Below, piece by piece: positions 14,246 through 62,269 of a DNA stretch of 64,000 nucleotides. Both the position numbers and the translations under genes were made by a program. The DNA is from Haliotis cracherodii (lineage: Eukaryota): the NCBI RefSeq assembly GCF_022045235.1, contig NW_027266269.1:5332001-5396000 (forward strand). Direction: 5' to 3'. Position 1 is the first letter of the stretch; each line of letters starts with the position of its first letter. The notes under the pieces are model-generated. The model did not search any database. It was not told where the DNA came from and saw only the letters and a list, made by a program, of their open reading frames with translations.

Positions 14246-14819
14246 TTAGACCGACAACACTGATTGAAAGCAGTCAATCATTTCAGCCATCAGCTTAAAC
14301 TTGGTTTCATTCCCAAGATTCACAAAGTCCTGTTGCTCCTCAAGATAAATGTCAAACGCATAACCATCTGGGTTTCTAAATCTGAACGATTTCGCAATTT
14401 GTATTGCAGCATTCAGGAGTTTAGGCATGCTGTGCTTATCTGCCAGATATAAAGCGTGAAGAACCTCTCTTTTTAAAGTAGATTCGTCACGACAGAGTGT
14501 TAACAGAAACTCCTCACACTTCCGCTTCAAGCCATCCATCTGGTACTCGTCAGCCAGTTCCAGCAGTCTGTCCACCGTTACCTGGGTGACAGGCCTGAGT
14601 TCTGATGGGTAAATACAGAGAAGCAAGTCCACAATGTCATCATATGTTTTTCCCGGTAGAGGGACTTCACTTTGCCGCTTTTCTTTAAAGTCTCCATTAA
14701 ACATCCTGTGAAAAACATCCGATGCTGCTGAAAGTGCCCCTTTGATGACGTGAACACGTCTCCCTTCTACAACCAGAGCGACATCAGTCTTGTCAGAGGG
14801 TTCGTCAAACACAGATGAC
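14246..14819 (-). CDS. BTB/POZ protein type A, copy A1, exon 2 (202 aa with exon 1)
   Basis: TDVALVVEGRRVHVIKGALSAASDVFHRMF...LLELADEYQMDGLKRKCEEFL is a BTB fold followed by BACK-like helices; acceptor tggcag|G; intact to TAA. Confidence 0.92.
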
Positions 14820-15051
14820 CTGCCAGCATAGAAGATCAAGTCCATGGGTCACTTTACATCAGAGAAAACAAGATCATTACAATACATACTCCTCTTTACA
14901 CTTGTGTTTCATTTCTTGACATTGTCATAACAACGTAAGTTACATCTTTACATTTCGCTTGGTCAGATACCATAGAAAGTCCACTCGTTTCGTAAAAATG
15001 GTATCTAATGAGAATGTGTGCTGAATTCACTATTTATCTTTCAAAGTTAGC

Positions 15052-15318
15052 GGGGCACGGGTGGCCCAGTCGTCTAAGGCGCCGCGATTCGCTGTGCAGA
15101 GTTGCGTCCCCTTGACACGCCAGAAACCTATGATTGTGGGTTCGAATCCCGGTTCACCCCGATTATGTTTCTAGGTTTGTCAGCACCATACTTGTGCTCG
15201 TGGGTTTCACCGAAGTGGTAAACGTCGGAGACCTGCATCACTTCGGGCTTTCCTCCCACATTAAGCTGACACGCCGCGATATAACTGGAATAATGTTAAA
15301 CCCAACTCACTCACTCAC
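15052..15318 (+). mobile_element. tRNA-derived SINE family 4 with TSD CTTTCAAAGTTA
   Basis: TSD on both sides; empty sites in paralogous introns near 26210, 41355, 45378, 51278. Confidence 0.85.
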
Positions 15319-15757
15319 TTTCAAAGTTATGGCTACCATTTTGGAGAAATTATAAGTTAAGGAAGGTTTTTTGTTTGTTTGTTTGTTTGTTCGTTTATTG
15401 TTCAACTCCGCGATCGGCAATGTTCCAGCTATATGACGGCGGTCTGTAAATAATCCAATCTGGACCAGTCAATCCAGTGATTGACTTCATGAGCACCGAT
15501 CCACGCAATTAGGGTATGATGACATGCATCAACCATGTCAGCGAGCCTGACCACCCGATCCCGTCTGTTGCCTCTTACGACAAACATAGTCGCCATTTAC
15601 AGCAAGCATGGGTTGCTGAAGACCTTCTCATCCTGAATCTTCACGGGTCTTAAAGAAGGTAAGTCCGAGTAATCTACTGAAACACAGCTCATCACAGAAC
15701 CACTATGGCAAGGGATATTTTATTTGATGTCATCTCGTATTTCCTACAGTGCAAAGT

Positions 15758-15920
15758 GGGGCGGTCGGGAAGCCTAGTGGTTAAAGCATTGGCTCATCAC
15801 GCCGAAGGTCCGGGTTCGATTCCCGACATGGGTACAATGTGTGAAGCCCATTTCTGGTGTACCCCACCGTGATATTGCTGGAATATTGCTAAAAGCGGCG
15901 TAAAATCATACTCACTCACT
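15758..15920 (+). mobile_element. tRNA-derived SINE family 1 (~165 bp, ACTC tail); about 20 copies, e.g. 12153(-), 22463(-), 23190(-), 24654, 28271, 29622, 36740(-), 43824, 45818, 47733(-), 55032, 63120
   Basis: A box TAGCCTAGTGG, B box GGTTCGATTCC, then non-tRNA body and GCGGCGTAAAACCAA(ACTC)n tail. Confidence 0.9.
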
Positions 15921-16544
15921 ACAGTACAAAGTAGATTTAAGATGTAGATGTAGATGTAACCATGGTTACACTGGAGCGGATTATATTTGTCTTCTTTAGA
16001 TTTGAGTATTGATCATGACTACATTTATTTTTTTATATTATGTTATGCCGTGTAAACATGAATTATGATCTGTATGATCTGTGACTAAACACACTTATGA
16101 TAATGTAAATATGATTAAGGTACTACTTACATTGTGTATTTAAAGAAATCGTCATATAAAAATAAAAATTCATCATATGAAATACTTGTATTATGAAATT
16201 ATCATTTGCTTTGTAATGCCAAGAAACGTCTTTTTATTGGATTGTCGCTGGTCCTAGTCGGGGAAATCTTGGGTAAGGGAAGTAACTCTAGCCCCGGATA
16301 ATATGTTATATTGTTAACGTGGTTACCAGGATGGTAAGTTGCGAATGTCTGCGGTACCGGGAGTTAACAGAGGGGTGTCAGCCTGTCGGGGTATATCATT
16401 TCCATGCCAGTGGTTTATTTTATGTCAGTCTTGTCAAATATGCGGGAATTGAAGCAATAGCAAGCACACACATTACATTCTACGCAGATATTGTTTCGAG
16501 TTTCCCGATTTACAATTTCCAGTTTCAAATATACTGATTGTTAC

Positions 16545-16579
16545 CTTATTTCATCCTTGGCATGTTTAGGAGTAGCCAT
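16545..16579 (-). CDS. BTB A1 exon 1 (MATPKHAKDEI-R)
   Basis: ACAATGG Kozak context, 35 nt, AG|GTAAC donor, phase 2 joins G|TCA of exon 2 in frame. Confidence 0.75.
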
Positions 16580-18304: not shown

Positions 18305-18857
18305 TTACCTTATTTCAAGGTAATCTACTCGCTTACGAAGTAGCTTAGCAAGGCTTCTCGATGAAAGTTTCGTATAGTCTTCATGGTTCGCTATAATCTG
18401 ATTAATTGAAACTTTAGATAACGTGTCTATAACTATCTCTAACAAAGTTTCCAATTCATACTTATCGGCCAGGTATAAGAAGTGCACTATGTCGTTACAG
18501 TTTTGTACACCATAAAACTTATCAGTTTTACATAATGACAATATAAACTCCTCACACCTCCTCTTCAGGCCAACTATCTGGTATTCGTCAGCCAGTTCTA
18601 GCAGTTTGTCGACCGTTTCCATGGTGATAGGCCTGAGTTCCGATGGGTAAATACACAGCAGCATGTCCACAATGTCATCGCGAGATTTGCCTGGAAGTGG
18701 AATTTCAGCCTGCTGCTGTTCTTTAAAGTCGCCATTAAGCATGCGGTCAAAGACATCTGACGCCGTTGACAGAATCGCTTTATTGACGTAGAGACGTCTT
18801 CCCTCCACCACAATCGCAACATCAGATTTAGCTGTGGGTTTATCAAAGACTGATGGC
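18305..18857 (-). CDS. BTB/POZ protein type B, copy B1, exon 2 (193 aa with exon 1)
   Basis: Acceptor ttgcag|G, PSVFDKPTAKSDVAIVVEGRRLYVNKAILS..., intact ORF. Confidence 0.9.
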
Positions 18858-19206: not shown

Positions 19207-19224
19207 GTTTTCAGTTTCGATTTC
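19207..19224 (-). promoter_or_regulatory. ISRE/IRF-like element AGTTTCGATTTC, 80 bp upstream of the type B ATG; also at 19641, 33985, 46604, 53393, 61199
   Basis: Matches ISRE consensus AGTTTCNNTTTC; identical in all six complete type B promoters. Confidence 0.55.
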
Positions 19225-19532
19225 AACAATAGACAAACAGTAATGGGCGGTAACTCGCATGTTAGGTTCTCAGTTTTCCATTCGACTAGTTTATTTATAG
19301 GATGTACTGTTGATTACACATGAACAGGCTTTGACGCACGACATTTACATGAACTGGGTCGAGGTTTAAGCTCAGTAACATTAGTCAGTGATGGTGAGTC
19401 AAACTCGCTGGCTTGGTTGATGCATGTTGAAGACCTAATTCTACCCCAGATCTTCACGGGTCACACGCGGACCTATACACTGGAGTATGGGCTGTGGGTC
19501 CCTGTTCCCCATACCCCGTCTCAGGTACTCAC

Positions 19533-19561
19533 CTTCTCTTCAGGAATACACGGTTGGCCAT
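19533..19561 (-). CDS. BTB B1 exon 1, duplicated distal copy (MANRVFLKR-R)
   Basis: ~430-bp tandem duplication of promoter plus exon 1; ATG and donor intact. Confidence 0.65.
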
Positions 19562-19871
19562 TTTCAACTTGCAGTAGAATTGGCTATCACACTGACAAGA
19601 AACGAGATCTTGATCGGAAAGCACACCTGCTTGTGTTTTTAGTTTCGATTTCAACAATAGACAAACAGTAATGGGAGGTAACTCGCATGCCAGGTTCTCA
19701 GGTTTCCATCTAACAACTAGTTTATGTATAGCATGTATTATTGGTTACACATGAACGCATAAAACGACTGTTGGTGTGTGAATGTGTCCACTTCGCGCTT
19801 AAGTCAAATGTTTGTTGGTTTGTTGCCTCGTCTGTCCGCGCCGACACTAACCGCAAAATCGTAGCGATGTA

Positions 19872-21350
19872 TACTGAGTCAAATTAAAAACTTCACATTT
19901 TTAAAAGTAATCCCATATATGATATAAAACGGACAAATGTATCAGAGAAGGTAATTTTTAATCATTAATGTCCAAAGAAGGATGTTAATTAACGGTGGTA
20001 ACCATAATTTGTTCCAAGCACCTACGGTATTCGGATATAACATCAACAGTTTAAATCATAAGTCCCAAGCACGAGAATCTGATGGCACACAAGTTCAATT
20101 GGGTGTATGGCCACAATGTGCGTTGACAACTGCCACACAACGCCTCCGCATGGACCTTGTGATGCTTGTGAACACATGATTGGGTAGACGACGCCATTGT
20201 TGCTGCAAAATGGTGCCAAGATCTTGCAAATTCTGTGATTGGTTCTCGAGAGTGCGCAGACTTCTGCCAAGAGCATCCCAGACGTGTTCGATAGGATTGA
20301 GGTCGGGAGACCTTGACGGCCAGTCCATGACGTTGACTCCCGCATTCTGAAGGAAATTTCTTGTCAAAATTGCTGTGTGGGGTCTGGCATTGTCGTGTTG
20401 GAAGATCAAACCGGGTCCATGTGCTGCCATAAAAGGCAGAAGTTCTGGTGCCAGCCTGGAACGTGCATTGCCACAGGAAGCACACCACACCATGACACTT
20501 CTGCCTCGAAATCTGTCAACTTCCTGTACACAACACTGGGCGTAACGTTCATGACGGCGCCTCCACACCCTCGCCCTACCATCAGCAAACCGAAGATTAA
20601 ATCGGGATTCATCACTGATGACGACTTGATTCCAATTCCTCTGAGTCCATCGTAAGTGTCGCTGTGCCCACAATTGACGTTGACGTCTGAGTAATTGAGT
20701 CAGAATCGGCCCGCAGTATGGCCGTCGTGCTTGAAGGTGAGCAGTTCTCAGGCGGTTTCTAACAGTTTGCGCACTCAGTTTACCCCTAAACAGTTCATTT
20801 CTGGTTGATGTAGCCGTCAAAAATCGGTTACGGAGGTGACGTAAGACAATCTGACGATCATCTGCATGTGACGTCACACGTGGTCGACCTGGCCGAGGGC
20901 GATCAACAGTGGTATCCGTTTGCTGTAGACGCGTCTGTAAATCATAAACAGTCCGTCGACTACAACCCATCGTCCCTGCGACTTCAGCTACGGACGTTCC
21001 CGTCTGCAACATGCCGATGGCACGTTCACGTTGCACATTTGAAAGGCGTGGCATGACAAATGGCCGTAAAGACTTTTGTTTTCTTGTGTTTTTCTTTTAT
21101 TGTTAATGACTGCTAACACGTATGGCTGAAAACACGTGCGGTATTATGGCCACGTGACCAGTTGCACGTGAAAAACCACTTTTGCCACTATAGTGCTGTG
21201 CACATGATTTTGATCACCTGCACTTAAAACGAGTGTTATCTGAAGACAATACGTGGCCATTACTGTTTAAATACACAATAAGGGCCCACAATGATAACTG
21301 GTCAAAATGTTAAAAGTTTAGGATAGTGAAGTTTTTAATTTGGTTCAGTA
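19872..21350 (-). mobile_element. Tc1/mariner DD34E transposon, copy 1
   Basis: TIR TACTGA(G/A)(T/C)CAAATTAAAAACTTCAC, TA TSD; empty TATATA sites near 46846, 53636, 61437. Confidence 0.95.
20095..21054 (-). CDS. Tc1 transposase (319 aa), open frame but apparently with an internal in-frame deletion
   Basis: Paired HTH, GRPR, SDESRF, FQHDNARPH-34-E (SPDLNPIE); the segment between VMVW and FQHD is shorter than is typical. Confidence 0.9.
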   Translation of the reverse strand: MPRLSNVQRERAIGMLQTGTSVAEVAGTMGCSRRTVYDLQTRLQQTDTTVDRPRPGRPRVTSHADDRQIVLRHLRNRFLTATSTRNELFRGKLSAQTVRNRLRTAHLQARRPYCGPILTQLLRRQRQLWAQRHLRWTQRNWNQVVISDESRFNLRFADGRARVWRRRHERYAQCCVQEVDRFRGRSVMVWCASCGNARSRLAPELLPFMAAHGPGLIFQHDNARPHTAILTRNFLQNAGVNVMDWPSRSPDLNPIEHVWDALGRSLRTLENQSQNLQDLGTILQQQWRRLPNHVFTSITRSMRRRCVAVVNAHCGHTPN

Positions 21351-23823: not shown

Positions 23824-23859
<36 letters not shown>

Positions 23860-25367: not shown

Positions 25368-25985
25368 TTACTGCAATATTTCAATATCAAAATCCGGAAT
25401 GGTTTCACGTAAGGAACTGAACTTGTCAGACCTACAACACATTTGAAAGTAGTCAATCATTTCCGTCATCAGCTTAAACTTGGTTTTATTCCCAAGATTC
25501 ACAAAGTCCTTCTCCAGATGCAAGGAATACCGCGCATTATTTTGTGTTCTAAATCTGAATGATTTCACAATTTGTATAGCAGCATTCAGGAGTGTAGGCA
25601 TGCTGTGCTTATCTGCCAGATATAAAGCGTGAAGAACCTCTCTTTGTAAAGCAGATTTGTCCCTACAGCTTGTTAACAGAAACTCCTCACACTTCCGCTT
25701 CAAGACAGTAATCTGGTACTCGTCAGCCAGTTCCAGCAGTCTGTCCACCGTTACCTTGGTGACAGGCCTGAGTTCTGATGGGTAAATACAGAGAAGCAAG
25801 TCCACAATGTCACCATATGTTTTTCCCGGCAGAGGGACTTCACTTTCCTGCTTTTCTTTAAAATCTCCATCCTGTGAAAAACATCCGATGCTGCTGAAAG
25901 TGCCCCTTTGATGACGTGAAGACGTCTCCCTTCTACAACCAGAGCGACATCAGTCTTGTCAGAGGGTTCGTCAAACACAGATGAC
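25368..25985 (-). pseudogene. BTB type A copy A2, exon 2, frameshifted
   Basis: 7-bp deletion at ~25870 (ccattaaacatcc to ccatcc) splits the ORF. Confidence 0.88.
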
Positions 25986-27400: not shown

Positions 27401-27435
27401 CTTTCATTTGCTACGGAGGAAGTATCGCTGGCCAT
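27401..27435 (-). CDS. BTB A2 exon 1, type A-prime (MASDTSSVANE-R)
   Basis: ACAATGG, 35 nt, AG|GTAC, phase 2; homolog at 42605-42639. Confidence 0.65.
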
Positions 27436-27639
27436 TGTCGACTGTTACTTGTTTAACGAAGAACGTACACCAGGAAATGGCTGTGGCCCAGGTCTGTCCT
27501 GTTTGTATTTTCGTTTTCAATGAAAAATGACCCACTGCAAGCTCCTCACAGCGATAGCCCGTTTGCGGAGCTCTCTATGTTACCGGGAGTGCAACGAAGG
27601 TGTCACGCGCTAGATAGGAGCTTGGACTCACTGGCGGTA

Positions 27640-28439: not shown

Positions 28440-30588
28440 ATCGGAGTAAAAAAAGCAGATTTTTAAAAATTGAATGAAATTTCACAGTTCTGCAACTACA
28501 GACTTTAAATTTTATTCAGAATAAGCAAAACAGTGGGCAGTTTTACCGGTATATCGGTAAATTGAGGTTCATTCTTTGCATGATACGTATCACATTATCA
28601 GATGATTTCAAATAGCGATTTTTATCATGTGTTTAATGGTATTAACTTGCCAAATACATGTATCTGCATTATGTTTCCGTAATTCCAAAATGCAAGTTCA
28701 CATTCTGATCACTTTACATCAGACAAAACAAGATCGTTACAATACATACCTGTCTTTACACTTGTGTTTCATTTCTTGACATTGTCATAACAACGTAAGT
28801 TACGTCATTACATTTCGCTTTGTCAGATACCATAGAAAGTCCACTCGTTTCGTAAAAATGGTATCTAATGAGAGTGTGTGCTGAATTCACTATTTATCTT
28901 TCAAAGTTAGGGGGGCACGGTTGGCCCAGTCGTCTAAGGCGCCGCCATTCGCTGTGCAGAGTTGCGTCCCCTTGACACGCCAGAAACCTATGATTGTGGG
29001 TTCGAATCCCGGTTCACCCCGATTATGTTTCTAGGTTTGTCAGCACCATACCCGTGCTCGTGGGTTTCACCGAAGTGGTAGACGTCTGAGACCTGCATCA
29101 CTTCGGGCTTTCCTCCCACATTAAGCTGACACGCCGTGATATAACTGGAATAATGTTAAAAGCGGCGTTAAACCCAACTCACTCACTCACTTTCAAAGTT
29201 AGTGTAATGGCTACCATTTTGGACACATTATAAGTTCAGGAAATTTTTTGTTTGTTTGTTTGTTCGTTTATTGTTCAACTCCGCGATCGGCAATGTTCCA
29301 GCTATATGACGGCGGTCTGTAAATAATCCAATCTGGACCAGTCAATCCAGTGATTGACATCATGAGCACTGATCCACGCAATATAGGGTATGATGACATG
29401 CATCAACCATGTCAGCGAGCCTAACCACCCGATCCCGTCTGTTGCCAAACATAGTCGCCATTTACAGCAAGCATGGGTTGCTGAAGACCTTCTCATCCCG
29501 AATCTTCACGGGTCTTAAGGAAGGTAAGTCCGAGTAATCTACTGAAACACAGCTCATCACAGAACCACTATGGTAAGGGGTATTTTATTTGATGTCATCT
29601 CGTATTTCCTACAGTGCAAAGTGGGGCGGTCGGGAAGCCTAGTGGTTAAAGCATTGGCTCATCACGCCGAAGATCCGGGTTCGATTCCCGAAATGGGTAC
29701 AATATGTGAAGCCCATTTCTGGTGTCCCCCACCGTGATATTGCTGGAATATTGCTAAAAGCGGCGTAAAATCAAACTCACTCACTACAGTACAAAGTAGG
29801 GAGAAGATATATGGATGAACAACTTCTTTATTGCAATCAGGAACGACGTTTCGGTGTAGGTTCTAACACTGTCATCAAACTAGTACAGAGTATGGCTGAC
29901 AAGTATTTATACAGGTAGGAGGTGGTGTTTATACAGTAGAGTAGATTTAAGATGTAGTTAACATGGTTACACTGGAGCGGATTATATTTGTCTTCTTCTT
30001 TAGATTTGAGTATTGATCATGACTACATTTATTTTTTTATATTATGTTATGACGTGTAAACATGAATTATGATCTGTATGATCTGTGACTAAACACACTT
30101 ATGATAATGTAAATATGATTAAGGTACTACTTACATTGTGTATTTAAAGAAATCGTCATATAAAAATCAAAATCCATTATATGAAATACTTGTATTATCA
30201 TTTGCTTTGTAATGCCAAGAAATGTCCTTTACATTGGATTGTCGCTGGTCGTAGTCAGGGAAATCTTGGGTAAGGGAAGTAAATCTAGCCCCGGATAATA
30301 TGTAATATTGTTTACGTGGTTACCAGGATGGCCAGTTGCGAATGTCTGCGGTACCGGGAGGTTAACAGAGGGGTGTCAGCCTGTCGGGGTATATCATTAC
30401 CATGCCAGTGACGCTCAGTGGTTTATTTTATGTCAGTCTTGTAAAACATGCGGGAATTGCAAGCAAAAACCAGCACACACATTACATTCTACGCAGATAT
30501 TGATTCGAGTTTCCGAATTTACAATTTCCAGTTTCAAATATACTGATTGTTACCTTATTTCATCCTTGGCATGTTTAGGAGTAGCCAT
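28440..30588 (-). pseudogene. BTB type A relic: 3'UTR and intron fused at ~28708 with the whole coding exon 2 deleted; exon 1 intact at 30554-30588
   Basis: Junction gttcacattctg|a|tcactttacatcagac joins sequences that are ~915 bp apart in A1. Confidence 0.88.
29826..29915 (-). ncRNA. Penelope-like pLTR fragment: TATA box, degenerate type I hammerhead-like motif, AATAAA (also 55236-55321, 63324-63410)
   Basis: Minus strand TATAAATAC...TTGATGA-CAGTGTTAG AAC CTACAC-CGAAACGTCGTTC...AATAAA; core has U instead of C3. Confidence 0.55.
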
Positions 30589-33061: not shown

Positions 33062-33629
33062 TTACCTTGTTTCAAGGCAATCTACTCGCTTACGAAGTAG
33101 CTTAGCAAGGCTTCTCGATGAAAGTTTCGTATAGTCTTCATGGTTCGCTATTGAGAAGCCATATCTAATCTGATTTATTGAAACGTTAGATAACGTGTCT
33201 GTTGCTATCTCTAACAAAGTTTCCAATTCATACTTATCGGCCAGGTATAAGAAGTGCACTATGTCGTTACAGTTTTTTACAACACGAAACTTATCAGTTT
33301 TACATAATGGCAATAGAAACTCCTCACACCTCCTCTTCAGGCCAACAATCTGGTACTCGTCAGCGAGTTCTAGCAGTTTGTCGACCGTTTCCATGGTGAT
33401 AGGCCTGAGTTCCGATGGGTAAATACACAGCAGCATGTCCACAATGTCATCGCGAGATTTGCCTGGAAGTGGAATTTCAGCCTGCTGCTGTTCTTTGAAG
33501 TAGCCATTAAGCAAGCAGTCAAAGACATCTGACGCAGTTGACAGAATCGCTTTATTGACGTAGAGACGTCTTCCCTCCACCACAATCGCAACATCAGATT
33601 TAGCTGTGGGTTTATCAAAGACTGATGGC
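33062..33629 (-). CDS. BTB type B copy B2, exon 2 (198 aa with exon 1)
   Basis: Intact paralog of B1, same acceptor. Confidence 0.9.
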
Positions 33630-33876
33630 CTGCAACGAATACGAAATTATCAGATGACGTCATGACTGTCACCCATTAATAATCGATAATGGACCAGACA
33701 ATCCAGTGATTAAGATCATAAGCATCGATCCACGCATCCCGTTAATCGCCTCTTACGACAAGCATTGGCTGCTAAGGACATATTCTATCCAGGATCTTCA
33801 CGGGTCTCACGCGGACGTATACACTGGAGTATGGGCTGTGGGTCCCTGTTCCCCATACCCCGTCTCAGGTACTCAC

Positions 33877-40552: not shown

Positions 40553-40571
40553 GGAGTCAATGCCGTGCATA

Positions 40572-41136
40572 TCACTTTTGAAAGTGGTAAATCATTTCAG
40601 CCATCAGCTTGATCTTGGTTTCATTCCTAAGATTCACAAAGTCCTGTTCGTTCTCCAGATACATGGTATTCTTCGGGTTATACGCTGGACATCTAAATTG
40701 GTAGTATTTCACAATTTGTATTGCACCATGCAGGAGATCAGGCAAGCTGTGCTTATCTGCAAGATATAAAGCGTGAAGAACCTCTCTTTGTGAAATATAT
40801 TTGTCAACACAGCGTGTTAACAGAAACCCCTCACACTTCCGCTTCAAGACATCAATCTGGTACTCGTCAGCCAGTTCCAGCAGTCTGTCCACCGTTGCCT
40901 TGGTGACAGGCCGGAGTTCTGATGGGTAAATACAGAGAAGCAAGTCCACAATGTCATCATATGTTTTTCCCGGTAGAGGGACTTCACTTTCCTGCTTTTC
41001 TTTAAAATCTCCATTAAACATCCTGTGAAAAACATCCGATGCTACTGAAAGTGCCCCTTTGTTGACGTGAAGACGTCTCCCTTCTACAACCAGAGCGACA
41101 TCAGTCTTGTCAGAGGGTTCGTCAAACACAGATGAC
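40572..41136 (-). CDS. BTB type A copy A3, exon 2 (199 aa with exon 1)
   Basis: Intact BTB ORF; stop codon supplied by an insertion. Confidence 0.9.
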
Positions 41137-42604: not shown

Positions 42605-42639
42605 CTTTTTATTGCAGCGGAGATAATTACGAGGGCCAT
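42605..42639 (-). CDS. BTB A3 exon 1, type A-prime (MALVIISAAIK-R)
   Basis: ACAATGG, 35 nt, AG|GTAC, phase 2. Confidence 0.65.
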
Positions 42640-42785
42640 TGTCGACTGTTGCTTGTTAAACGAAGAACGTACACCAGGAAATGGCTGTGCCCCAGGTCTG
42701 TCCTGTTTGTATTTTCGTTTTTAACGAATGCTGACTCACTGCAAGCTCCTCACAGCGATACCCGTTCGCGGAGCTCTCCATCCGA

Positions 42786-44582: not shown

Positions 44583-45156
44583 TTAGACCGACAACACTGA
44601 TTGAAAGCAGTCAATCATTTCAGCCATCAGCTTAAACTTGGTTTCATTCCCAAGATTCACAAAGTCCTGTTCCTCCTCAAGATGAATGTCAAGCGCATAA
44701 GCATCTGAGTCTCTAAATCTGAACGATTTCGCAATTTGTATTGCAGCATTCAGGAGTTTAGGCATGCTGTGCTTATCTGCCAGATATAAAGCGTGAAGAA
44801 CCTCTCTTTTTAAAGTAGATTCGTCACGACAGAGTGTTAACAGAAACTCCTCACACTTCCGCTTCAAGACAGTAATCTGGTACTCGTCAGCCAGTTCCAG
44901 CAGTCTGTCCACCGTTACCTTGGTGACAGGCCCGAGTTCTGATGGGTAAATACAGAGAAGCAAGTCCACAATGTCATCATATGTTTTTCCCGGTAGAGGG
45001 ACTTCACTTTCCTGCTTTTCTTTAAAATCTCCATTAAACATCCTGTGAAAAACATCCGATGCTGCTGAAAGTGCCCCTTTGATGACGTGAAGACGTCTCC
45101 CTTCTACAACCAGAGCGACATCAGTCTTGTCAGAGGGTTCGTCAAACACAGATGTC
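44583..45156 (-). CDS. BTB type A copy A4, exon 2
   Basis: Intact ORF and acceptor; mosaic of A2-like and A1-like residues. Confidence 0.9.
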
Positions 45157-46495: not shown

Positions 46496-46524
46496 CTTCT
46501 CTTTGGGGATACACGAGTGGCCAT
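46496..46524 (-). CDS. Type B exon 1 (MATRVSPKR-R) located upstream of type A exon 2 (A4)
   Basis: ATG, GTGAGT donor and ISRE intact; no type B exon 2 between it and A4. Confidence 0.6.
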
Positions 46525-50483: not shown

Positions 50484-51057
50484 TTAGAACGACAACACTG
50501 ATTGAAAGCAGTCAATCATTTCAGCCATCAGCTTAAACTTGGTTTCATTCCCAAGATTCACAAAGTCCTGTTGCTCCTCAAGATAAATGTCAAACGCATA
50601 ACCATCTGGGTTTCTAAATCTGAACGATTTCGCAATTTGTATTGCAGCATTCAGGAGTTTAGGCATGCTGTGCTTATCTGCCAGATATAAAGCGTGAAGA
50701 ACCTCTCTTTTTAAAGTAGATTCGTCACGACAGAGTGTTAACAGAAACTCCTCACACTTCCGCTTCAAGCCATCCATCTGGTACTCGTCAGCCAGTTCCA
50801 GCAGTCTGTCCACCGTTACCTGGGTGACAGGCCTGAGTTCTGATGGGTAAATACAGAGAAGCAAGTCCACAATGTCATCATATGTTTTTCCCGGTAGAGG
50901 GACTTCACTTTGCCGCTTTTCTTTAAAGTCTCCATTAAACATCCTGTGAAAAACATCCGATGCTGCTGAAAGTGCCCCTTTGATGACGTGAACACGTCTC
51001 CCTTCTACAACCAGAGCGACATCAGTCTTGTCAGAGGGTTCGTCAAACACAGATGAC
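50484..51057 (-). CDS. BTB type A copy A5, exon 2 (identical to A1 exon 2 protein except last residue)
   Basis: Intact ORF and acceptor. Confidence 0.92.
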
Positions 51058-52098: not shown

Positions 52099-52825
52099 GA
52101 AAACACATTGGTGCTACGTTTGAGCTTATATTTCACACGTTCGTCTTTGTATATACACAAACGAGAGGCTCGTTCCTCTCTTAAATATTGTAATTATACA
52201 TTTACAGTGGAGAAGTGGGGTCAAATGAAAATAATATGGTTGCGTAAAAATACTAAATAATCAAGTCAGCTTCGTGTGACTAAATCACTAATTGTTTACA
52301 ACTAATCACCAACCTTTCCCTGTTCGGAGATTGATATAGAAATGCTGTTATAATATGGCATCAGCGCTCGATTCCAACATGTGTACAATGCAAAGAACGG
52401 CCACTAGTTCGCAATGAAAGTCATTGGTTACCGAGTTTGTATAAAAAGGAGATATGTTAACATTTTGTTTGCCAAATATAGGGCGGTCGCGAAATTTCTG
52501 ATTTTGACTCCAGAAATGCGACTAAATCTGAATTTTTCCGAAATAATTACACCACAACTCTAGATTTTTGTAGGCTTTCAGACAAATGTTATCCTATTAT
52601 TGGTCTCAAATCATCAATCAACGCAATTGGGATCGATGACATTTATCAACCAAGTCAGCGAGACTGACCACACGATCCCGTTAGTTGCCTCTTACGACAA
52701 GCATAGTTGCCTTTTGGTTGCTGAAGACCTATTCTATCCCAGATATTCACGGGTCTCACGCGGACCTATACACTGGAGTCTGGGCTCTGGGTCCCTGTTT
52801 CCCGTTCCCCGTCTCAGGTACTCAC

Positions 52826-52854
52826 CTTCTCTTCAGGGATACACGAGTGGCCAT
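52826..52854 (-). CDS. Type B exon 1 copy (MATRVSLKR-R); promoter truncated at ~52915
   Basis: ATG and donor intact, upstream ISRE missing. Confidence 0.4.
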
Positions 52855-53284
52855 TTTCAGCTTGCAGTAGAATTGGCTACCACACGGACAAGAAACGAGA
52901 TCTTGATCGGAAAGCCCAGTAGTCACATATGATAAAAAAAACATATGAGGGAAAAAGGTAACTTATCCGTGACTTCATTCATACAACACCCAACTACCAG
53001 ATTGTTGGTATTCAGACAACTTCATTCTGGTTGAAATGTGAGTCAGTAAGGTCACGCGGACGTTGGTTGGTTGGTTTGTTGTTTAACGCCGCACTCAGCA
53101 ATAGTCCAGCTTTATGACGGCGGTCTGTAAATAATCAAGTCTGGACCTGACAATCCAGTGATTTACATCATGATCATCGATCCACGCAATTGTGATCGAT
53201 GACATTTATCAAAGTCGCGCGGACCTATACACTGGAGTATGGGCTCTGGGTCCCTGTTTCCCGTTCCCCGTCTCAGGTACTCAC

Positions 53285-53313
53285 CTTCTCTTTGGAGATA
53301 CAGGAGTGGCCAT
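53285..53313 (-). CDS. Type B exon 1 (MATPVSPKR-R), candidate first exon for A5
   Basis: ATG, donor and ISRE (53393) intact. Confidence 0.55.
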
Positions 53314-55771: not shown

Positions 55772-57835
55772 AGGGGCACTGATCTAACGCAATTCCCCGG
55801 GACTGGTTGTTGCCTTTGTAATTGTTTTTTCCCAGTGAGTACCCAGATGTATAGCAGAAATCTAGACTAGTTCGCGACCTCTGCTGCGCCATTCGTAAGC
55901 GCATTAGTCACTTTTATGGGTAGTAATAAGGGCGTATGGTCACATTGATCAACAAAATGAAATACAGTTTTCGAGATAATAAGGAAATGTAGGTATCTTT
56001 GTGAGTAGCATCTGTAATGGTGACGAAGTTTTGATAAGTCACTTGCGTGGTAATTTTGCGATTTTTGTTTACACTATTTCGACTTGCAACACAAAGTAAA
56101 TATTTCACCTGAGCATTGCTTTTTTTATAGTGTGTATATTTTTTTACTGTCAAAATGTGTAACAAATTTATTAAACGTCTAAATATTCAGTTATTTTACA
56201 AAGAGACTGAAAAACATTTCCATCTGTATTATTATGATAACGAATTCCAACATTTTGAGGTTTAATGTCATCACCAAGAGACTGAAAATGTTACGTTGAA
56301 AAGTACATTTCTATGTTGTTTGGCTTCTAATCCTACATAATAATCTGTAATGTTTGTAGGCCCTTTTGATCGTCTTAATCAACATGGACAGATATTTTAG
56401 TCAAAATGACTGAAATATTTACACATTTTATAAATTGCCTGAGAGAATCACATTTTACAAATTGACGGTAAGATATACACGCTTATAAAGGAAAAGACCT
56501 GTGACAACAACGTCTATCGCGCATTGAAGAATTTCCCAACCAAGACGTAGAGAAACAAGAACGAATCGGTTCAAATGAAGGAAAACAAAATGCAAATACC
56601 ATAATTACAACCTACCAAATTTATGTGTATAAATTTTAAGCAGCTTCCGTGTTCGAGGAATGTATCCGTGAATATCCACACAAAGGAACAACATCCCACT
56701 CGTCTGCAGCTGTACAAAGAAACTTATTCGATGTCACGTGTCTCAGTAACAATCAAATATTTTAAAAGATATATATCGTTTCGGGATATTATAACCCGTG
56801 TTCGTTTCTAAACTGATCACTTGGATTGTTTCAGGTGTTTCACATAGGTGTCAAGTCTCAAAGGTCGGCTGAGAAAGCCCACGTGACAACTATTTTCATA
56901 ATGTCCACGGTTCCTAAAAAATCCATTGAGTGATTGATAACAATAATCAATCAATCAACGTATTATCGGTTAACCCTTTGAACAAAGTAAGTTGTTTTTA
57001 CATCGGCACTTCACGCCATGATGTGAGTGTTTTCCCTTTGTTTTAGTAAACCTAGACATGTAAACACTCACTTTTGATATATCCACTGTGCAAGATAACA
57101 GTGATTTATCAATCAACGTATTTTCTGTTAATCCTTTGATGACTAGGAACGATCCGTTGATTTACAAAAAAAAGTAAATCAACTGATCATTCATCTGTTG
57201 CTGGGCTGCCACGTGCATATAACATAACACACATTTCATCTCACTTTAAACCTGGATTTAGATTGAATAATTACCCCAGACACAATAAATGCCAAATGGG
57301 GACCTTTGTCTGGTAATCTAAGTGGTGCTACCACTAATTGTACCTGTAATAAATTCATTAACTGAGCATCAAGTGAATGACGACAAATACACAAGTGTAG
57401 GGTTATGCGAGAAAACGTGGATGACAACAGTGGAGTAGTAATCGTATTATCGACGCAATCGGAAATCCGAAAATGCTATCACTGCATGGGTACTTTTTTT
57501 AGTATTAAACTATAACCATCTGGGGTATTTCCAAATGACGACATCCGATGAGCTCCGTCGTTCTTTTTGTCTGTTTGTTTAGGCTGAAGAAATTAATTAA
57601 CATGCGCCCTTTGTCGAAATCTTTACAGTTAACCAATCAGTTAACCAATCAGTGTTTATGCAAAAATGAGTAAAACAAATATTGCCTCCAGCCTCCAAGT
57701 TTATTTAGCTGTCCTTGCAGACGGTAGCCCAGTCTGTGGTCACGCTCAGTTGCGTTGCGTATCATCCGGGTACTCACGGGGAAAAAAACAATAACAAATA
57801 ACCAGTCCGGGGAATTGCGTTAGATCAGTGCCCCT
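55772..57835. mobile_element. 2.06-kb non-autonomous Kolobok-like DNA transposon, TTAA TSD
   Basis: TTAA|AGGGGCACTGATCTAACGCAATTCCCCGG...CCGGGGAATTGCGTTAGATCAGTGCCCCT|TTAA; empty gTTAAc sites near 16363 and 30361; no long ORF. Confidence 0.88.
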
Positions 57836-58026
57836 TTAACAGAGGGGTGTTGGCCTGTCGGGTTATATCATTTCCATGCCAGTGACGCTCAGTGGTTTAT
57901 GTTATGTCAGTCTTGAAAAACATGCGGGAATTGAAGCAAAAGCAAGCACACACATAACATTCTACGCAGATATTGATTCGAGTTTCCCGATTTACAATTT
58001 CCAGTTTCAAATATACTGATTGTTAC

Positions 58027-58061
58027 CTTATTTCATTCTTGGGATGTTTAGGAGTAGCCAT
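58027..58061 (-). CDS. Type A exon 1 (MATPKHPKNEI-R) whose own exon 2 is deleted (junction ~55003)
   Basis: Homologous to 16545-16579; intron homology runs down to ~55005 then switches to spacer sequence. Confidence 0.55.
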
Positions 58062-59088
58062 TGTCACCAGGTAGTTACTGCACCGTGATTGTATGATGAT
58101 AATAATTGTCAGGTGACGAGGCCACAGCTAACACGGTAACTTGATGAGCAAAACCCTTGTTTCACTCTCGATTTGACACTTCTGAGAAGTAGACCTAAGG
58201 GAGGTAACTCGCTTGGTTCTTCTTTCTTACAAATTGAGATTGAAATATCAATACTTAAGCTGTAATGGGTCGGATGGTTAGGGTCGTGTGGGTTCGAACC
58301 TGACGTCGTTAAAACGTGTCCTGATTTCTTTTTCCGTGTGACAGAATTTACTTGACAATTATGTGTCCCCTGATTTATTTGGACTTTAGGTATACTGATT
58401 TATTTATTTGGTATTTGTGAGTGAGACAGAATTTACCTGGTACTTCCTCGTGTCCTGATGTATTTGGTATTTGGGTTGGTTTGTTGGCTGGTTTGTTGTT
58501 TAACGCCGCACTCGGCAATATTCCAGCTATATGACGGCGGTCTTTAATCCAGTGATTGACATCATGAGCATCAATCCACGTACTTGGGATAATGCCATGC
58601 ATCAACCAAGTTTGCGAGCCCGACCACCCGATCCCGTTAATCGCCTCTTACGACAAGCGTAGTCGCCTTTTACGGCAAGTATGGGTTGCTGAAGAACTAT
58701 TCTACCCCGAATTTTCACGGGCCTGGTATTTGGGAGTGAGACAGAATTTACCTGGCACTTCCACGAGTCCTGGTTTATTTGGAATTTGGGAGTGAGACAG
58801 AATTTATCTGGCACTTCCAAGTTTCCTGGTTTATTTGGTATTTGGGAGTGAGACAGAATTTACCTGGCACTTCTACGAGTCCTGGTTTATTTGGAATTTG
58901 GGAGTGAGACAGAATTTTCACAACACTTCCACGTGTCCTGAATTATTTGGAATTTGGGTTGGTTAGTTGGTTCGCTTGTTGTTTAACGCCGCACTCAGCA
59001 ATATTCCAGCTATATGACGGCGGTCATAATCAAGCCTGGACCAGACAATCCAGTGATTAATGTCACGAGGATCGATTCACGCACTTGC

Positions 59089-59755
59089 CACAGTGCCAGT
59101 TGACCTCTCCCAATGCGAGCTGACCAGTGCTTGATGACACACACTAACCATCTCTCACAGTGCCAGTTGACCTCTCCCAATGCGAGCTGACCAGTGCTTG
59201 ATGACACACTAACCATCTCTCACAGTGCCAGTTGACCTCTCCCAATGCGAGCTGACCAGTTGTTGATGACACACTAACCTCATCTCACAGCGCCAGTTGA
59301 CCTCTCCCAATGCGAGCTGACCAGTGCTTGATGACACACTAACCAGCTCTCACAGTGCCAGTTGACCTCTCCCAATGCGAGCTGACCAGTGGTTGATGAC
59401 ACACGTCAATCTGCTCTCACAGCGCCAGTTGACCTCTCCCAGTACGAGCTGACCAGTGCTTGATGACACACTAACAAGCTCTCACAGTGCCAGTTGACCT
59501 CTCCCAGTGCGAGCTGACTAGTGCTTGATGATACACTTACAAGCTCTCACAGTGCCAGTTGACCTACCCCAATGCGAATCGACCAGTGGTTGATGACACA
59601 CGTCAATCTGCTCTCACAGCGCCAGCTGACCTCGCCCAGAGCGAGCTGACAAGTGGTTGATGACACACTAACCATCTCTCACAGTGCCAGTTGATCTCTC
59701 CCAGTGCGAGCTGACCAGTGCTTGATGACACACACGTATCGGCTCTAGCCACAGT
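59089..59755. repeat. 65-bp minisatellite, about 10 copies
   Basis: Same unit as the 31556 array. Confidence 0.93.
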
Positions 59756-60221
59756 GTTATTCATGAAGAGGACGTAAAAGTATTATCAAACACGTTTTCA
59801 AATAAAGGGAATATTTATTTTAGCATAAGATCGCATACAAATCGTCTAAACAGTGTGAGGACATAAATATAAATACACACACTTTGTCAATAACGGCAAC
59901 ACAACATGATGGAAAACAAAAACGTCAAATGTCATTTGGGTATAACAAATCCCTGGAAAAAAATCCATAGAAGATGTACCTATTGTCACTCAAGATCAGA
60001 TAGCAGGGGACCTATTCTCACTTCGGTTCATCTAACAGGAAACAGTGGCACTGTGAATCCTCATAAATCACAATCATATTATTTTTTATCTTCTCACACT
60101 TATCAGAGAAAAAAAGGATGGGCGTTGGGATAGCCGTGTTGTTAAGGCGTTACTCGTTATACTGAAGTCCGAGGATGTATTGCCCACATGCCTACAGTGA
60201 AAATCAGCTCAATATCCCATT

Positions 60222-60795
60222 TTAGTGTTTTATTTTTTCAAGGCAATCTATTCGCTTACGAAGTAGCTTAGCAAGGCTTCTCAATGAAAGTTTCGTATAG
60301 TCTTCATGGTTCGCTATTGAGAAGCCATATCTAATCTGATTTATTGAAACGTTAGATAACGTGTCTGTTGCTATCTCTAACAAAGTTTCCAATTCATACT
60401 TATCGGCCAGGTATAAGAAGTGCACTGTGTCGTTACAGTCATGTACATGTTCATATATAGACGTTTTACATAATGGCAATAGAAACTCCTCACACCTCCT
60501 CTTCAGGCCAACAATCTGGTACTCGTCAGCCAGTTCTAGCAGTTTGTCCACAGTTTCCCTGGTGACAGGCCTGAGTTCTGATGGGTAAATACATAGCAGC
60601 ATGTCCACAATGTCATCGCGAGATTTGCCTGGAAGTGGAATTTCAGCCTGCTGCTGTTCTTTGAAGTAGCCATTAAGCATGCAGTCAAAGTCATCTGACG
60701 CCATTGACAGAATCAGTTTATTGACGTAGAGACGTCTTCCCTCCACCACAATCGCAACATCAGATTTAGCTGTGGGTTTATCAAAGACTGATGGC
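60222..60795 (-). CDS. BTB type B copy B3, exon 2 (200 aa with exon 1)
   Basis: Intact paralog, same acceptor. Confidence 0.9.
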
Positions 60796-61090
60796 CTGCA
60801 ACGAATACGAAATTATCAGATGACGCATGTTTAACGCCGCACTCAGCAATATTCCAGTCTGTAAATAATCGAGTCTGGACCAGACAATCCAGTGATTTAC
60901 ATCATGAGCATCGATCCACGCAATTAGGATCGATGACATGCATCAACCAAGTCAGCGAGATTGACCACCCGGTCCCGTTAGTTGCCTCTTACGACAAGCA
61001 TAGTCGCCTTTTTGATTGCTGAAAACCTATTCTATCCTGGATCTTCACGGGTCTCACGCGGACCTATACACTGGAGTCTCGGGTACTCAC

Positions 61091-61119
61091 CTTCTCTTCA
61101 GGGATACATGAGTAGCCAT
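61091..61119 (-). CDS. BTB B3 exon 1 (MATHVSLKR-R)
   Basis: 29 nt, AG|GTGAGT. Confidence 0.8.
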
Positions 61120-62269
61120 TTTCAGCTTGCAGTAGAATTGGCTACCACACGGACAAGAAACGAGATCTTGATCGGAAAGCACACCCGCTTGTGTTTTTAG
61201 TTTCGATTTCAACAATAGACAAACAGTAATGGGCGGTAACTCGCATGCCAGGTTCTCGCGTTTCAATTCAACAACTCGTTTATTTATAGGATGCACTATT
61301 GATTACAAATGAACGCAGAATGTGAATAATGTGAATGTGGCCATTTCGCGCTTAAGTAAAATGTTTGTTGTTTTGTTGCCATAGGAGGTATTCCTCGCCT
61401 GTCCGCGCCCACACTAACCGCGAAATCGTAGCGATGTATATACCGCCACTGTCTATTACGTATTATTGTAAAAGCGAGTATATTTGTGTGTTGTTTAACG
61501 CCGTACTAAAATCAACGTCACCGACATGACGACTGCTCGTACATAATTGAGACTTGACCAGGTAAACCAGCAATTGACATTGCATGAAACCATTCACGCC
61601 TTCAGGGTACGATGGCACGCATAAAAGCTTTTGGTTGTTTAACGCCGCACTCAGCAATATTCCAGCTATATGACGGCGGTCTGTAAATAATCGAGTCTGG
61701 AACAGACAATCTAGTGATTGATATCAAGAGTATCGATCTAAGCAATTGGGATCGATGACATGCATCAACCAAGTCAGCGAGCCTGACCACCCGATCCCGT
61801 TCGTCGCCTTTTACGACAAGCATAGTCACCTTTTACGGCAAGCATGGGTTGCTGAAGACCTATTCTACCCTGAGAATCTTCACCGGTCATGTTGACAAGT
61901 GTGACCCCCACGGGGCTTAAATATTAAAATGGTCATACTAAATTGTTGGTTTATGTTTAAAAGTAATCTATACATCTCTTGACATGGTAGATATGAATTT
62001 CCTTTATAATGTTATTGTGATGAAAACACATAACATGTAACGTGTGTACTATCTGTATTGACTGTCCGTCCAGGGAAGGAATAGACAGCATTGCCACTGT
62101 AAACCGTTTGTTTTGTTTGTTTGTTTGTTTGCTGTTTAACGCCGCACTCTACAATATTCAGCGAGCCTGACCACCCGATCCCGTTAGTCGCCTCTAACGT
62201 CAAGCATAGTCACCTTTTACGATATGCATTGGTTGCTGAAGAGCTATTCGACCCCGGGTCTTCACGGGT

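What the first reader, a model, noticed from the sequence alone, without database searches (positions are those of the whole stretch)
14246..61210. Candidate IRF/STAT-inducible, fast-evolving cluster of BTB-only proteins (possible invertebrate innate-immune Cullin-3 adaptor family)
Seen: eight BTB exon-2 copies plus at least three exon-2-less relics in ~50 kb, each ~200 aa with only a BTB fold and BACK-like helices (no MATH, Kelch or zinc finger). They show gene birth and death, mosaicism, variable loops, and IRF-type motifs at the same promoter position. Established: BTB proteins are Cullin-3 substrate adaptors; nematode MATH-BTB and F-box families expand with positive selection; molluscs have IRF/STAT antiviral signalling. 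Inference: this is an interferon-stimulated-gene-like array that targets or decoys foreign proteins. I cannot tell whether it has been described.
Basis: partly seen in the sequence, partly recalled or inferred. Interest (0 to 1): 0.85.

Follow-up and report, generated by a model that had tools for sequence, protein, structure and literature searches.

The report
Abalone BTB-only gene array with IRF-type promoters
The window holds half of a 115-kb black-abalone array of small genes that look like cullin-3 ubiquitin-ligase adaptors without a target-binding domain. They diverge fast in surface loops and carry interferon-regulatory-factor-type DNA motifs in front of their first exons, which makes them a testable but unproven candidate for an inducible immune gene family.

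Summary
The window (Haliotis cracherodii, contig C6:5332001-5396000) holds eight minus-strand BTB terminal exons, one of them frameshifted, and twelve ATG-bearing first exons of three types. The full array is 18 terminal exons and 29 first exons over about 115 kb.

The proteins are about 200 aa: a BTB domain, a 3-box and one further helix, with no MATH, Kelch or zinc finger. They model confidently onto CRL3 adaptors (KBTBD4, vaccinia A55, SPOP, KLHL3) and keep the hydrophobic-x-Glu loop and the 3-box signature.

Every GAAANNGAAA in 154 kb (28 of 28) lies on the gene strand, and 22 of these sit 83-108 nt before a first-exon ATG. The three diverged promoter types align over a (GAAANN)3 block.

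dN/dS is about 1 or higher. 17 of 18 ORFs are intact and all coding indels are in frame. My site-model signals are inflated by mosaic ancestry, so positive selection is likely but not proven.

RefSeq annotates the genes automatically, and I found no paper on them.

First readers of the scan also noted the rest of this array and other BTB clusters in this genome.

The parts
14246..14819 (-). Terminal exon, subfamily A (A14), 190 codons plus stop; acceptor ...ctggcag|G
   Evidence: (BTB E 3.5e-24)
16545..16579 (-). First exon type II (MATPKHAKDEI + AG), GT donor. Upstream lie GAS TTCTCAGAA at -116 and the variant GAGAGTGAAAC
18305..18857 (-). Terminal exon, subfamily B (B18); equals exon 2 of RefSeq protein P0010
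19105..19133 (-). First exon type I (MATHVFLKR + AG), used in P0010. Its promoter has three perfect GAAA repeats, GAAATCGAAACTGAAA, at 19209-19224
19533..19561 (-). Second type I first exon upstream of the same terminal exon (MANRVFLKR + AG); ISRE at 19643-19652
25368..25985 (-). Terminal exon, subfamily A, frameshifted by a 7-nt deletion between codons for HRM and GDFKEK. A pseudogene or an assembly error
27401..27435 (-). First exon type III (MASDTSSVANE + AG); GAAAACGAAA at 27509-27518 (-83)
30554..30588 (-). First exon type II; GAAAGTGAAAC at 30687-30696 (-108) and GAS TTCTCAGAA at -127
33062..33629 (-). Terminal exon, subfamily B (B33); equals exon 2 of RefSeq protein P0008
33877..33905 (-). 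First exon type I (MANRVFLKR + AG), used in P0008; GAAATCGAAACT at 33987-33996 (-91)
40572..41136 (-). Terminal exon, subfamily A (A40); equals exon 2 of P0275
42605..42639 (-). First exon type III (MALVIISAAIK + AG), used in P0275/P0004. Its motif is degraded to TAAAAACGAAAAT
44583..45156 (-). Terminal exon, subfamily A (A44); equals exon 2 of P0001, the protein modelled
46496..46524 (-). First exon type I (MATRVSPKR + AG), used in P0001; GAAATCGAAACT at 46606-46615
50484..51057 (-). Terminal exon, subfamily A (A50), 99% identical to A14; equals exon 2 of P0272
52826..52854 (-). First exon type I whose promoter homology breaks off about 64 nt before the ATG, with no ISRE. Its duplicate outside the window is used in RefSeq isoform P0274
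53285..53313 (-). First exon type I (MATPVSPKR + AG), used in P0272; triple repeat GAAATCGAAACTGAAA at 53389-53404
58027..58061 (-). First exon type II with no terminal exon of its own. Its duplicate outside the window is the first exon of RefSeq isoform X1 (P0273), so it is probably an alternative first exon for A50. Variant GAGAGTGAAAC, plus GAAAAAGAAA at 58325-58334
60222..60795 (-). Terminal exon, subfamily B (B60); equals exon 2 of P0277
61091..61119 (-).
20095..21054 (-). Intact Tc1/mariner-type transposase ORF (319 aa) carried inside the duplicated unit. A degraded second copy lies at 34453-35405
   Evidence: (DDE_3, HTH_Tnp_Tc3_2)

Best explanation
This is a tandem array in the black abalone, enlarged by repeated duplication.

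Shown:
- The genes have two exons. A 10-12-codon first exon with its own promoter is spliced in phase 2 to one terminal exon.
- Each gene encodes a protein of about 200 aa made of a BTB domain, the two-helix 3-box and one long C-terminal helix. There is no separate substrate-binding domain.
- The array grows and shrinks by segmental duplication and by exchange between copies. Several terminal exons have two or three alternative first exons.

Inferred mechanism:
- The proteins dock on Cullin-3 through the conserved Phe-Lys-Glu loop and the 3-box.
- The fast-diverging loops that flank the 3-box, together with the C-terminal helix, either recognise targets or pair with other BTB proteins.
- Transcription is driven by IRF-family factors, plus STAT for type II promoters. 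These would bind a tandem GAAANN element 83-108 nt before the ATG, making the array an inducible, diversifying set of ubiquitin-ligase adaptors or modulators used in conflict with pathogens.

My odds for the separate steps: anatomy and evolution about 0.9; Cul3 docking about 0.6; IRF control about 0.5; immune role about 0.35. The overall confidence of 0.4 is a judgement on this reading as a whole, not the product of these odds.
For: Array and gene structure. The RefSeq proteins are identical to exon 1 plus exon 2 pairs of the window.

Fold:
- pLDDT 87, pTM 0.81.
- Top Foldseek hits are all CRL3 adaptors: KBTBD4, vaccinia A55 BTB-BACK bound to Cul3, KBTBD2-CUL3, SPOP, KLHL3/Cul3, at E 5e-8 to 5e-7.
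- Sequence hits are to KLHL22, SPOP and KBTBD4.

Cul3 elements:
- FKE aligns with KLHL22 LKE. This is the position of SPOP Met233 and KLHL11 Phe130, which insert into Cul3 (PMC3597819).
- F54, K55, E56 and H131, L135, A136, D137 of the 3-box helix are invariant or nearly so, even in 40%-identical paralogues.

Promoters:
- 28 of 28 GAAANNGAAA in 154 kb are on the gene strand; 22 of them lie 83-108 nt before a first-exon ATG, 4 lie about 273 nt before type II first exons, and 2 lie inside a long intron. In the window the count is 11 against 4.0 expected.
- The genome-wide density of GAAANNGAAAC is 0.021 per kb, against about 0.14 per kb in the array.
- The three promoter types are otherwise diverged but align over a (GAAANN)3 block.
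- The type I promoter and the GCGAGTTACC...ISRE module occur nowhere else in the genome, so they are not a dispersed repeat.
- One 45%-identical paralogue on another contig has the same GAAATCGAAAC followed by TATAAA.
- IRF DNA-binding-domain genes are present.
- Oyster IRF2 and IRF8 activate ISRE reporters (PMC5557890).
- The abalone viperin promoter has a GAS site and a one-mismatch ISRE.

Evolution:
- Pairwise dN/dS is 1.1-4.9 in A. In B it is 0.1-0.7 in the BTB core, and 1.2-2.0 in the C-terminal part for most pairs (range 0.3-2.0).
- One-ratio codon model: A has omega 2.65, with 2dlnL 9.3 against omega = 1. The B BTB core has omega 0.35, with 2dlnL 8.8.
- For the pair A14/A86, dN (0.12) exceeds the flanking non-coding divergence (0.08).
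- 17 of 18 ORFs are intact.
- Every coding indel is a multiple of 3, while flanking non-coding indels are of all lengths.
Against: - There are no expression data of any kind, so the transcription start is unknown.
- In type I promoters a TATAAATA lies about 70 nt upstream of the motif, so the motif could sit in the 5' UTR.
- 10 of the 29 first exons lack a perfect motif, including one that a RefSeq isoform uses.
- Copies are paralogous, so the motif gives at most three to five independent observations.
- Six of seven distant paralogues have no exact motif nearby.
- Cul3 binding is not shown; the complex test was not specific.
- The N-terminal helix that strengthens BTB dimers in SPOP and KLHL proteins is short or absent.
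- In subfamily A the variable loops also have high synonymous divergence. Pairwise pN/pS there is 1.1-1.7 and not significant per pair. The large M1a/M2a signals are therefore partly an artefact of mosaic ancestry.
- Part of the copy number could be haplotype duplication in the assembly, because the large blocks are 98.5% identical.
Confidence: 0.4

Rival explanations
1. The genes and proteins are as described, but the role is not immune. This would be a rapidly turning-over BTB family used in germ line or early embryo, like the rodent TDPOZ arrays. Other fast-evolving abalone reproductive proteins are a precedent. The GAAA repeats would serve another factor or a constitutive promoter.
For: - Fast evolution and birth-and-death are equally typical of reproductive genes (my own knowledge).
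- No expression data were obtainable.
- First exons without the motif are used in RefSeq models.
- The genome has many other BTB tandem clusters, so expansion as such is not specific to this locus (notes).
Against: - The tandem GAAANN element is kept in register in three otherwise diverged promoter types and found nowhere else in 154 kb.
- IRFs are the known readers of this element, and mollusc IRFs use it.
Confidence: 0.28
2. The proteins do not build active ligases. Lacking a substrate-binding domain, they would act as caps or decoys. They could occupy Cullin-3, or heterodimerise with full-length BTB adaptors such as the SPOP/roadkill homologue and so tune or block them. They could also serve as bait for pathogen factors that attack BTB adaptors.
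For: - There is no MATH, Kelch, PHR or other domain.
- The whole protein is BTB, 3-box and one helix.
- Subfamily A shows amino-acid change within the BTB domain itself, with omega 3.8 in that half.
Against: - Small BTB proteins with short C-terminal parts can still recognise substrates (my own knowledge of KCTD proteins).
- The most variable positions lie outside the BTB core in both subfamilies.
- Nothing here separates a decoy from an adaptor.
Confidence: 0.2
3. The array is largely non-functional. It would be recently duplicated copies drifting neutrally, with dN/dS near 1 and chance motifs inherited by duplication. Part of the copy number would be an assembly artefact.
For: - dN/dS is close to 1 in many pairs.
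- One copy is frameshifted.
- Large blocks are 98.5% identical.
- Motif copies are identical by descent.
Against: - 17 of 18 ORFs are intact at 5-13% divergence.
- All coding indels are in frame, while neighbouring non-coding DNA has many indels of other lengths.
- The B BTB core is under purifying selection, omega 0.35.
- Cul3-contact residues are invariant across 40%-identical paralogues.
- The motif block is conserved between promoter types that have otherwise diverged.
Confidence: 0.07

Closest known systems
Nematode MATH-BTB (BATH) and F-box adaptor expansions
   Same: - Large, clustered, lineage-specific families of cullin adaptors with rapid birth and death.
- Diversification lies outside the cullin-binding part, which has been read as surveillance of foreign proteins (summarised in PMC4334554).
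- RefSeq names the abalone genes after C. elegans BATH-36/38.
   Different: - There is no MATH domain. The variable part is a few loops and a helix next to the 3-box.
- Subfamily A also changes within the BTB domain.
- An IRF-type promoter element is present; I know of no IRF genes in nematodes (my own knowledge).
SPOP / HIB (roadkill) and BTB-BACK-Kelch adaptors (KLHL3, KLHL11, KLHL22, KBTBD2, KBTBD4, KEAP1); vaccinia A55
   Same: - Best sequence and fold matches.
- The same BTB plus 3-box arrangement, the hydrophobic-x-Glu loop and the A-D-x-H signature of the first 3-box helix.
   Different: - The abalone proteins stop shortly after the 3-box and lack the rest of BACK and any Kelch or MATH domain.
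- Identity is only 20-31%.
- Cul3 binding is not demonstrated.
Virus-inducible, multicopy E3 families of vertebrates (fish finTRIM, mammalian TRIM5/TRIM22 clusters)
   Same: This is a resemblance in how it may work, from my own knowledge: tandem arrays, ISRE-type promoters, variable surface loops, copy-number differences between close species.
   Different: - An unrelated fold (RING-B-box-coiled-coil-B30.2), and those proteins are ligases in themselves.
- For the abalone array, induction and antiviral activity are unknown.
Rodent TDPOZ (MATH-BTB) clusters
   Same: A tandem, recently expanded, SPOP-related family (my own knowledge).
   Different: TDPOZ genes keep the MATH domain and are expressed in early embryo and testis. 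This is the model for the non-immune rival.

Membership tests
BTB/POZ domain superfamily (Pfam PF00651) | Match to the BTB profile above the curated cut-off | tested here: met
   70-86 bits against a cut-off of 20.5 for the seven intact copies; the frameshifted copy scores 28.5 bits
BTB/POZ domain superfamily (Pfam PF00651) | BTB fold | tested here: met
   AlphaFold2 model with pLDDT 87; Foldseek probability 1.00 to solved BTB structures
Cullin-3 (CRL3) substrate adaptors | Hydrophobic-x-Glu residue pair in the alpha3-beta4 loop that inserts into Cul3 | tested here: met
   F54-K55-E56 aligns with KLHL22 L-K-E. It is invariant or nearly so in the family. Role of the position: PMC3597819
Cullin-3 (CRL3) substrate adaptors | 3-box: two helices after the BTB domain packing on its last helices | tested here: met
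   Helices 126-138 and 142-152 in the model. Alignments of 166-182 columns to BTB-BACK structures. Sub-threshold PF24570/PF07707 matches
Cullin-3 (CRL3) substrate adaptors | Physical binding to Cullin-3 | tested here: inconclusive
   The complex test with a surrogate CUL3 N-terminal domain gave 'no answer', because an unrelated control scored as high. This is evidence neither for nor against binding
Cullin-3 (CRL3) substrate adaptors | A separate substrate-recognition domain (MATH, Kelch, PHR, zinc finger ...) | tested here: not met
   No second Pfam domain in the ORFs or in the RefSeq proteins. The protein ends 48 residues after the 3-box
MATH-BTB (BATH / SPOP / TDPOZ) family | N-terminal MATH domain | tested here: not met
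   Only 10-12 residues precede the BTB region and there is no MATH match. The whole-genome MATH scan found nothing anywhere, so it is uninformative. The RefSeq name 'BTB and MATH domain-containing' is a best-hit label only
BTB-BACK-Kelch family | Full BACK domain and Kelch propeller | tested here: not met
Interferon-stimulated-gene-like (IRF/STAT-driven) genes | ISRE / IRF-E element in the proximal promoter | tested here: met
   GAAATCGAAACT (type I), GAAAGTGAAAC (type II) and GAAAACGAAAAT (type III) lie 83-108 nt before the ATG. 19 of 29 first exons have a perfect core. The transcription start is unknown
Interferon-stimulated-gene-like (IRF/STAT-driven) genes | Induction by dsRNA, virus or IRF overexpression | not testable with these tools
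No paper in the held library reports expression of these genes
Interferon-stimulated-gene-like (IRF/STAT-driven) genes | Presence of the transcription factor in the organism | tested here: met
   IRF DNA-binding-domain exons at two loci in this genome

The most novel reading that the evidence does not exclude
A mollusc may have built an interferon-stimulated-gene-like restriction system from minimal Cullin-3 adaptors. It would be an array of BTB plus 3-box proteins whose variable loops bind pathogen proteins. Each terminal exon would be served by interchangeable first exons that bring different IRF- or IRF/STAT-responsive promoters. The array appears expanded in black abalone (about 17 annotated proteins) compared with red abalone (2 in the database).
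Probability: 0.25. Interest if true: 0.8.

Novelty: new variant of a known kind. Interest (0 to 1): 0.55.

Why it matters
If the array is IRF-induced and acts through Cullin-3, it would have three consequences.

- It would be an invertebrate counterpart of the virus-inducible E3 families of vertebrates, built from a different and much smaller scaffold.
- It would give mollusc antiviral biology a concrete set of effector candidates downstream of the RIG-I/STING-IRF axis already shown in oysters.
- It would show that a BTB plus 3-box module alone can diversify as a recognition surface.

The species is the critically endangered black abalone, whose decline is due to an intracellular bacterial disease (my own knowledge). 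A species-specific expansion of possible immune ubiquitin-ligase adaptors would therefore be worth surveying for copy number and haplotypes in surviving populations.

Even without an immune role, the locus is a clean example of alternative first exons with separate promoters feeding tandem terminal exons.

Tried and rejected
I therefore could not fetch promoters from H. rufescens, H. rubra or H. asinina for cross-species footprinting.
- Complex prediction (P0001 with residues 30-215 of a full-length CUL3 homologue, P0258) was busy eight times. It then returned 'no answer': score 0.79, but one unrelated control scored 0.77. This counts neither for nor against binding.
- A whole-genome MATH scan found nothing anywhere and is uninformative.
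- Distant paralogues on C23, C1, C34 and C7 have no exact motif near their coding start; only one on C80 does.
- Site-model tests (my own M1a/M2a implementation) gave large likelihood ratios: A 12.9 and 28.9 by half, B C-terminal part 11.1. I do not rely on them. One search shows that synonymous divergence is also high in the variable loops of A, as expected from mosaic ancestry, and pairwise excesses of non-synonymous change are not significant.
- I rejected a dispersed repeat or transposon as the origin of the promoters.
- I rejected the neutral-pseudogene reading.
- Literature searches for this family in abalone or molluscs found nothing relevant.
Full-length proteins used were those returned by the database search, and the codon analyses used terminal exons only.

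Full report
WHAT IS THERE

The window is G000:C6:5332001-5396000. Several RefSeq proteins named 'BTB and MATH domain-containing protein 36/38-like' are identical to exon pairs in the window.

Eight minus-strand ORFs carry a Pfam BTB domain at E 1e-19 to 4e-24; the frameshifted copy's ORF holds only the end of the domain and scores 2e-06. They fall into subfamily A (terminal exons ending at 14246, 25368, 40572, 44583 and 50484) and subfamily B (18305, 33062 and 60222). The two subfamilies are about 50% identical.

The long ORFs are not the whole genes. In every copy a polypyrimidine tract and AG lie just before the codons for (S/T/P)SVFD. The RefSeq proteins start with 10-12 other residues. I located those residues in twelve micro-exons on the same strand, each an ATG plus 29 or 35 coding nt ending in a phase-2 GT donor. 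There are three types:
- Type I: MAT/N-x-V-x-x-KR.
- Type II: MATPKH-x-K-x-EI.
- Type III: MALVIISAAIK or MASDTSSVANE.

Full-length proteins are those returned by the database.

The copy at 25368-25985 has a 7-nt deletion between the codons for HRM and GDFKEK and is frameshifted.

EXTENT

The array continues beyond the window. Over C6:5346249-5461214 there are 18 terminal exons, all on the minus strand: nine A, seven B and two of a third type, C. There are 29 first exons.

The window is a mosaic of duplicated blocks 88-98% identical. The largest blocks shared with the part outside the window are 98.5% identical. That means either a very recent segmental duplication or haplotype duplication in the assembly, and I cannot tell which.

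The genome has at least 100 BTB loci, with smaller tandem BTB clusters on other contigs. First-reader notes of this scan mention those clusters and the rest of this array.

RELICS OR ALTERNATIVE FIRST EXONS

There are four more first exons than terminal exons in the window. RefSeq isoforms X1 and X2 of one gene just outside the window (P0273, P0274) share one terminal exon. One starts with a type II first exon 6.6 kb upstream and the other with a type I first exon. That region is the 98.6%-identical duplicate of window 52328-61906.

The 'orphan' type II exon at 58027-58061 is therefore probably an alternative first exon of the gene ending at 50484. One type I copy (52826-52854) has lost its promoter upstream of about -64. 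Its duplicate is nevertheless used in a RefSeq model.

THE PROTEIN

P0001 is the first exon at 46496-46524 plus the terminal exon at 44583-45156. It models with pLDDT 87 and pTM 0.81. The model shows a BTB core, then helices 126-138 and 142-152, a poorly predicted loop at 153-172, and a final helix at 180-199.

The best structural matches are all Cullin-3 adaptors: KBTBD4, vaccinia A55 BTB-BACK in complex with Cul3, KBTBD2-CUL3, SPOP and KLHL3/Cul3. Sequence search of solved structures gives KLHL22, SPOP and KBTBD4.

F54-K55-E56 aligns with L-K-E of KLHL22. This is the loop residue (SPOP Met233, KLHL11 Phe130) that inserts into Cul3. The two helices after the BTB domain are the 3-box that completes the Cul3 interface (PMC3597819). 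These residues, and H131/L135/A136/D137 of the first 3-box helix, are invariant or nearly so even in paralogues only 40% identical.

There is no MATH, Kelch or other domain, so the RefSeq name is a best-hit label.

BTB-only relatives of 200-440 aa occur in other Haliotis species, in Gigantopelta, Mercenaria and Saccostrea, and in Porites corals. Copies at least 50% identical were found only in Haliotis. The database holds about 17 proteins of this array for H. cracherodii but only two genes for H. rufescens. Their closest cross-species pairs are 89% identical. This may reflect real expansion or differences in assembly.

PROMOTERS

GAAANNGAAA occurs 11 times in the window against 4.0 +/- 2.0 in shuffles. 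All 11 lie on the gene strand and within 300 nt upstream of a first-exon ATG.

In the 154 kb that I assembled from the genome, all 28 occurrences are on the gene strand. Of these, 22 lie 83-108 nt before a first-exon ATG, 4 lie about 273 nt before type II first exons, and 2 lie inside a long intron. None lies in the flanks. Genome-wide, GAAANNGAAAC occurs once per 47 kb, against about once per 7 kb in the array.

The motifs by promoter type are:
- Type I: GAAATCGAAACT at -91, a full match to the ISRE consensus. Some copies read GAAATCGAAACTGAAA.
- Type II: the palindromic GAS-type site TTCTCAGAA, then (C)AAATCGAAAGTGAAAC at -108.
- Type III: GAAAACGAAAAT at -83.

The three types are otherwise hard to align, but this block aligns in register as three GAAANN repeats. 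Types I and II also share a GCGAGTTACC-N-CCC box about 35-42 nt upstream. The type I promoter and the box-plus-motif module occur nowhere else in the 1.18-Gb genome, so they are not a dispersed repeat. One distant paralogue on contig C80 has the same GAAATCGAAAC followed by TATAAA; six others have none.

IRF DNA-binding-domain genes exist in the genome. Oyster IRF2 and IRF8 activate ISRE reporters (PMC5557890). The abalone viperin promoter has a GAS site and a one-mismatch ISRE.

Limits:
- Copies are paralogous, so there are only three to five independent observations.
- 10 of the 29 first exons lack a perfect core.
- The transcription start is unknown.
- In type I a TATAAATA lies upstream of the motif.

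EVOLUTION

Pairwise dN/dS is 1.1-4.9 in A. In B it is 0.1-0.7 for the BTB core, and 1.2-2.0 for the C-terminal part in most pairs (range 0.3-2.0).

My one-ratio codon model gives omega 2.65 for A (2dlnL 9.3 against omega = 1) and 0.35 for the B BTB core (2dlnL 8.8). My M1a/M2a tests are large, and the favoured sites are residues 120-127, 143, 154-166, 193 and 196.

However, one search shows that in A these loops also have high synonymous divergence, and no pairwise excess is significant. The 5' half of A copies is nearly identical at synonymous sites (0-0.03) while the 3' half is not (0.16-0.21). Exchange between copies has therefore produced mosaics, which violates the model.

What holds:
- For the pair A14/A86, amino-acid divergence (0.12) is at least as fast as divergence in the flanking non-coding DNA (0.08).
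- 17 of 18 ORFs are intact.
- All coding indels are in frame, while flanking indels are of all lengths.
- The Cul3-contact residues do not change.

That pattern fits diversification under a constraint to stay functional, not decay.

VERDICT

The complex test gave no verdict. No paper in the held library describes the family.

I class it as a new variant of a known kind: clustered, diversifying cullin adaptors, as in nematode MATH-BTB genes (PMC4334554). It differs in lacking a substrate domain and in carrying IRF-type promoters.

Noticed in passing
window 20095-21054 (-) and 34453-35405 (-): An intact 319-aa Tc1/mariner-type transposase ORF (DDE_3, HTH_Tnp_Tc3_2) and a degraded second copy. 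Both sit at the same place in a duplicated block (19438-21706 and 33782-36059, 93% identical), so the element was copied with the block.
   Followed up: partly
window 1509-2438; 10372-11146; 31556-32412 and 59089-59756; 39726-40553: Four minisatellite-like tandem arrays seen in the self-comparison. The one at 10451-10825 and the one at 39726-40553 read as long repetitive ORFs. The one at 39726-40553 lies directly downstream of the stop of the A40 gene.
   Followed up: no
outside the window: L001/L011, window-equivalent 75269-80260, and again at 131960-135009: About 5 kb of a 54-55-bp tandem repeat fills the roughly 8-kb intron between the type III first exon and the terminal exon of the two C-type genes.
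   Followed up: no
L023 (G000:C13:13966801-13969300), minus strand: The abalone viperin gene has several elements within 140 nt of its ATG: a GAS site TTCCCAGAA at -86, TTCAGCGAA at -135, a one-mismatch ISRE (GAAAGCAAAACT, reverse strand) at -138, and a TATA-like CATATAAAC. It could serve as a positive control in induction experiments.
   Followed up: partly
L016 (G000:C80, around 45401532-45402018, + strand): A 45%-identical BTB paralogue with an in-frame TAA has GAAATCGAAAC followed about 25 nt later by TATAAA, upstream of its open frame. It has the same core as the type I promoters but lies on another contig.
   Followed up: partly
G000:C7:20189333-20253846; C5:31323030-31341936; C5:36438894-36454231; C5:38047742-38065229; C1:24827495-24834441: Further tandem clusters of BTB-domain exons in the same genome. 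At least 100 BTB loci score E <= 1e-8, with 263 first-look candidates.
   Followed up: no
window 52328-61906 against window-equivalent 116766-126344, and 40126-46585 against 110911-117353: Blocks of 6-10 kb are 98.5-98.7% identical within the array. This is either a very recent segmental duplication or haplotype duplication in the assembly, and it affects the copy count.
   Followed up: partly
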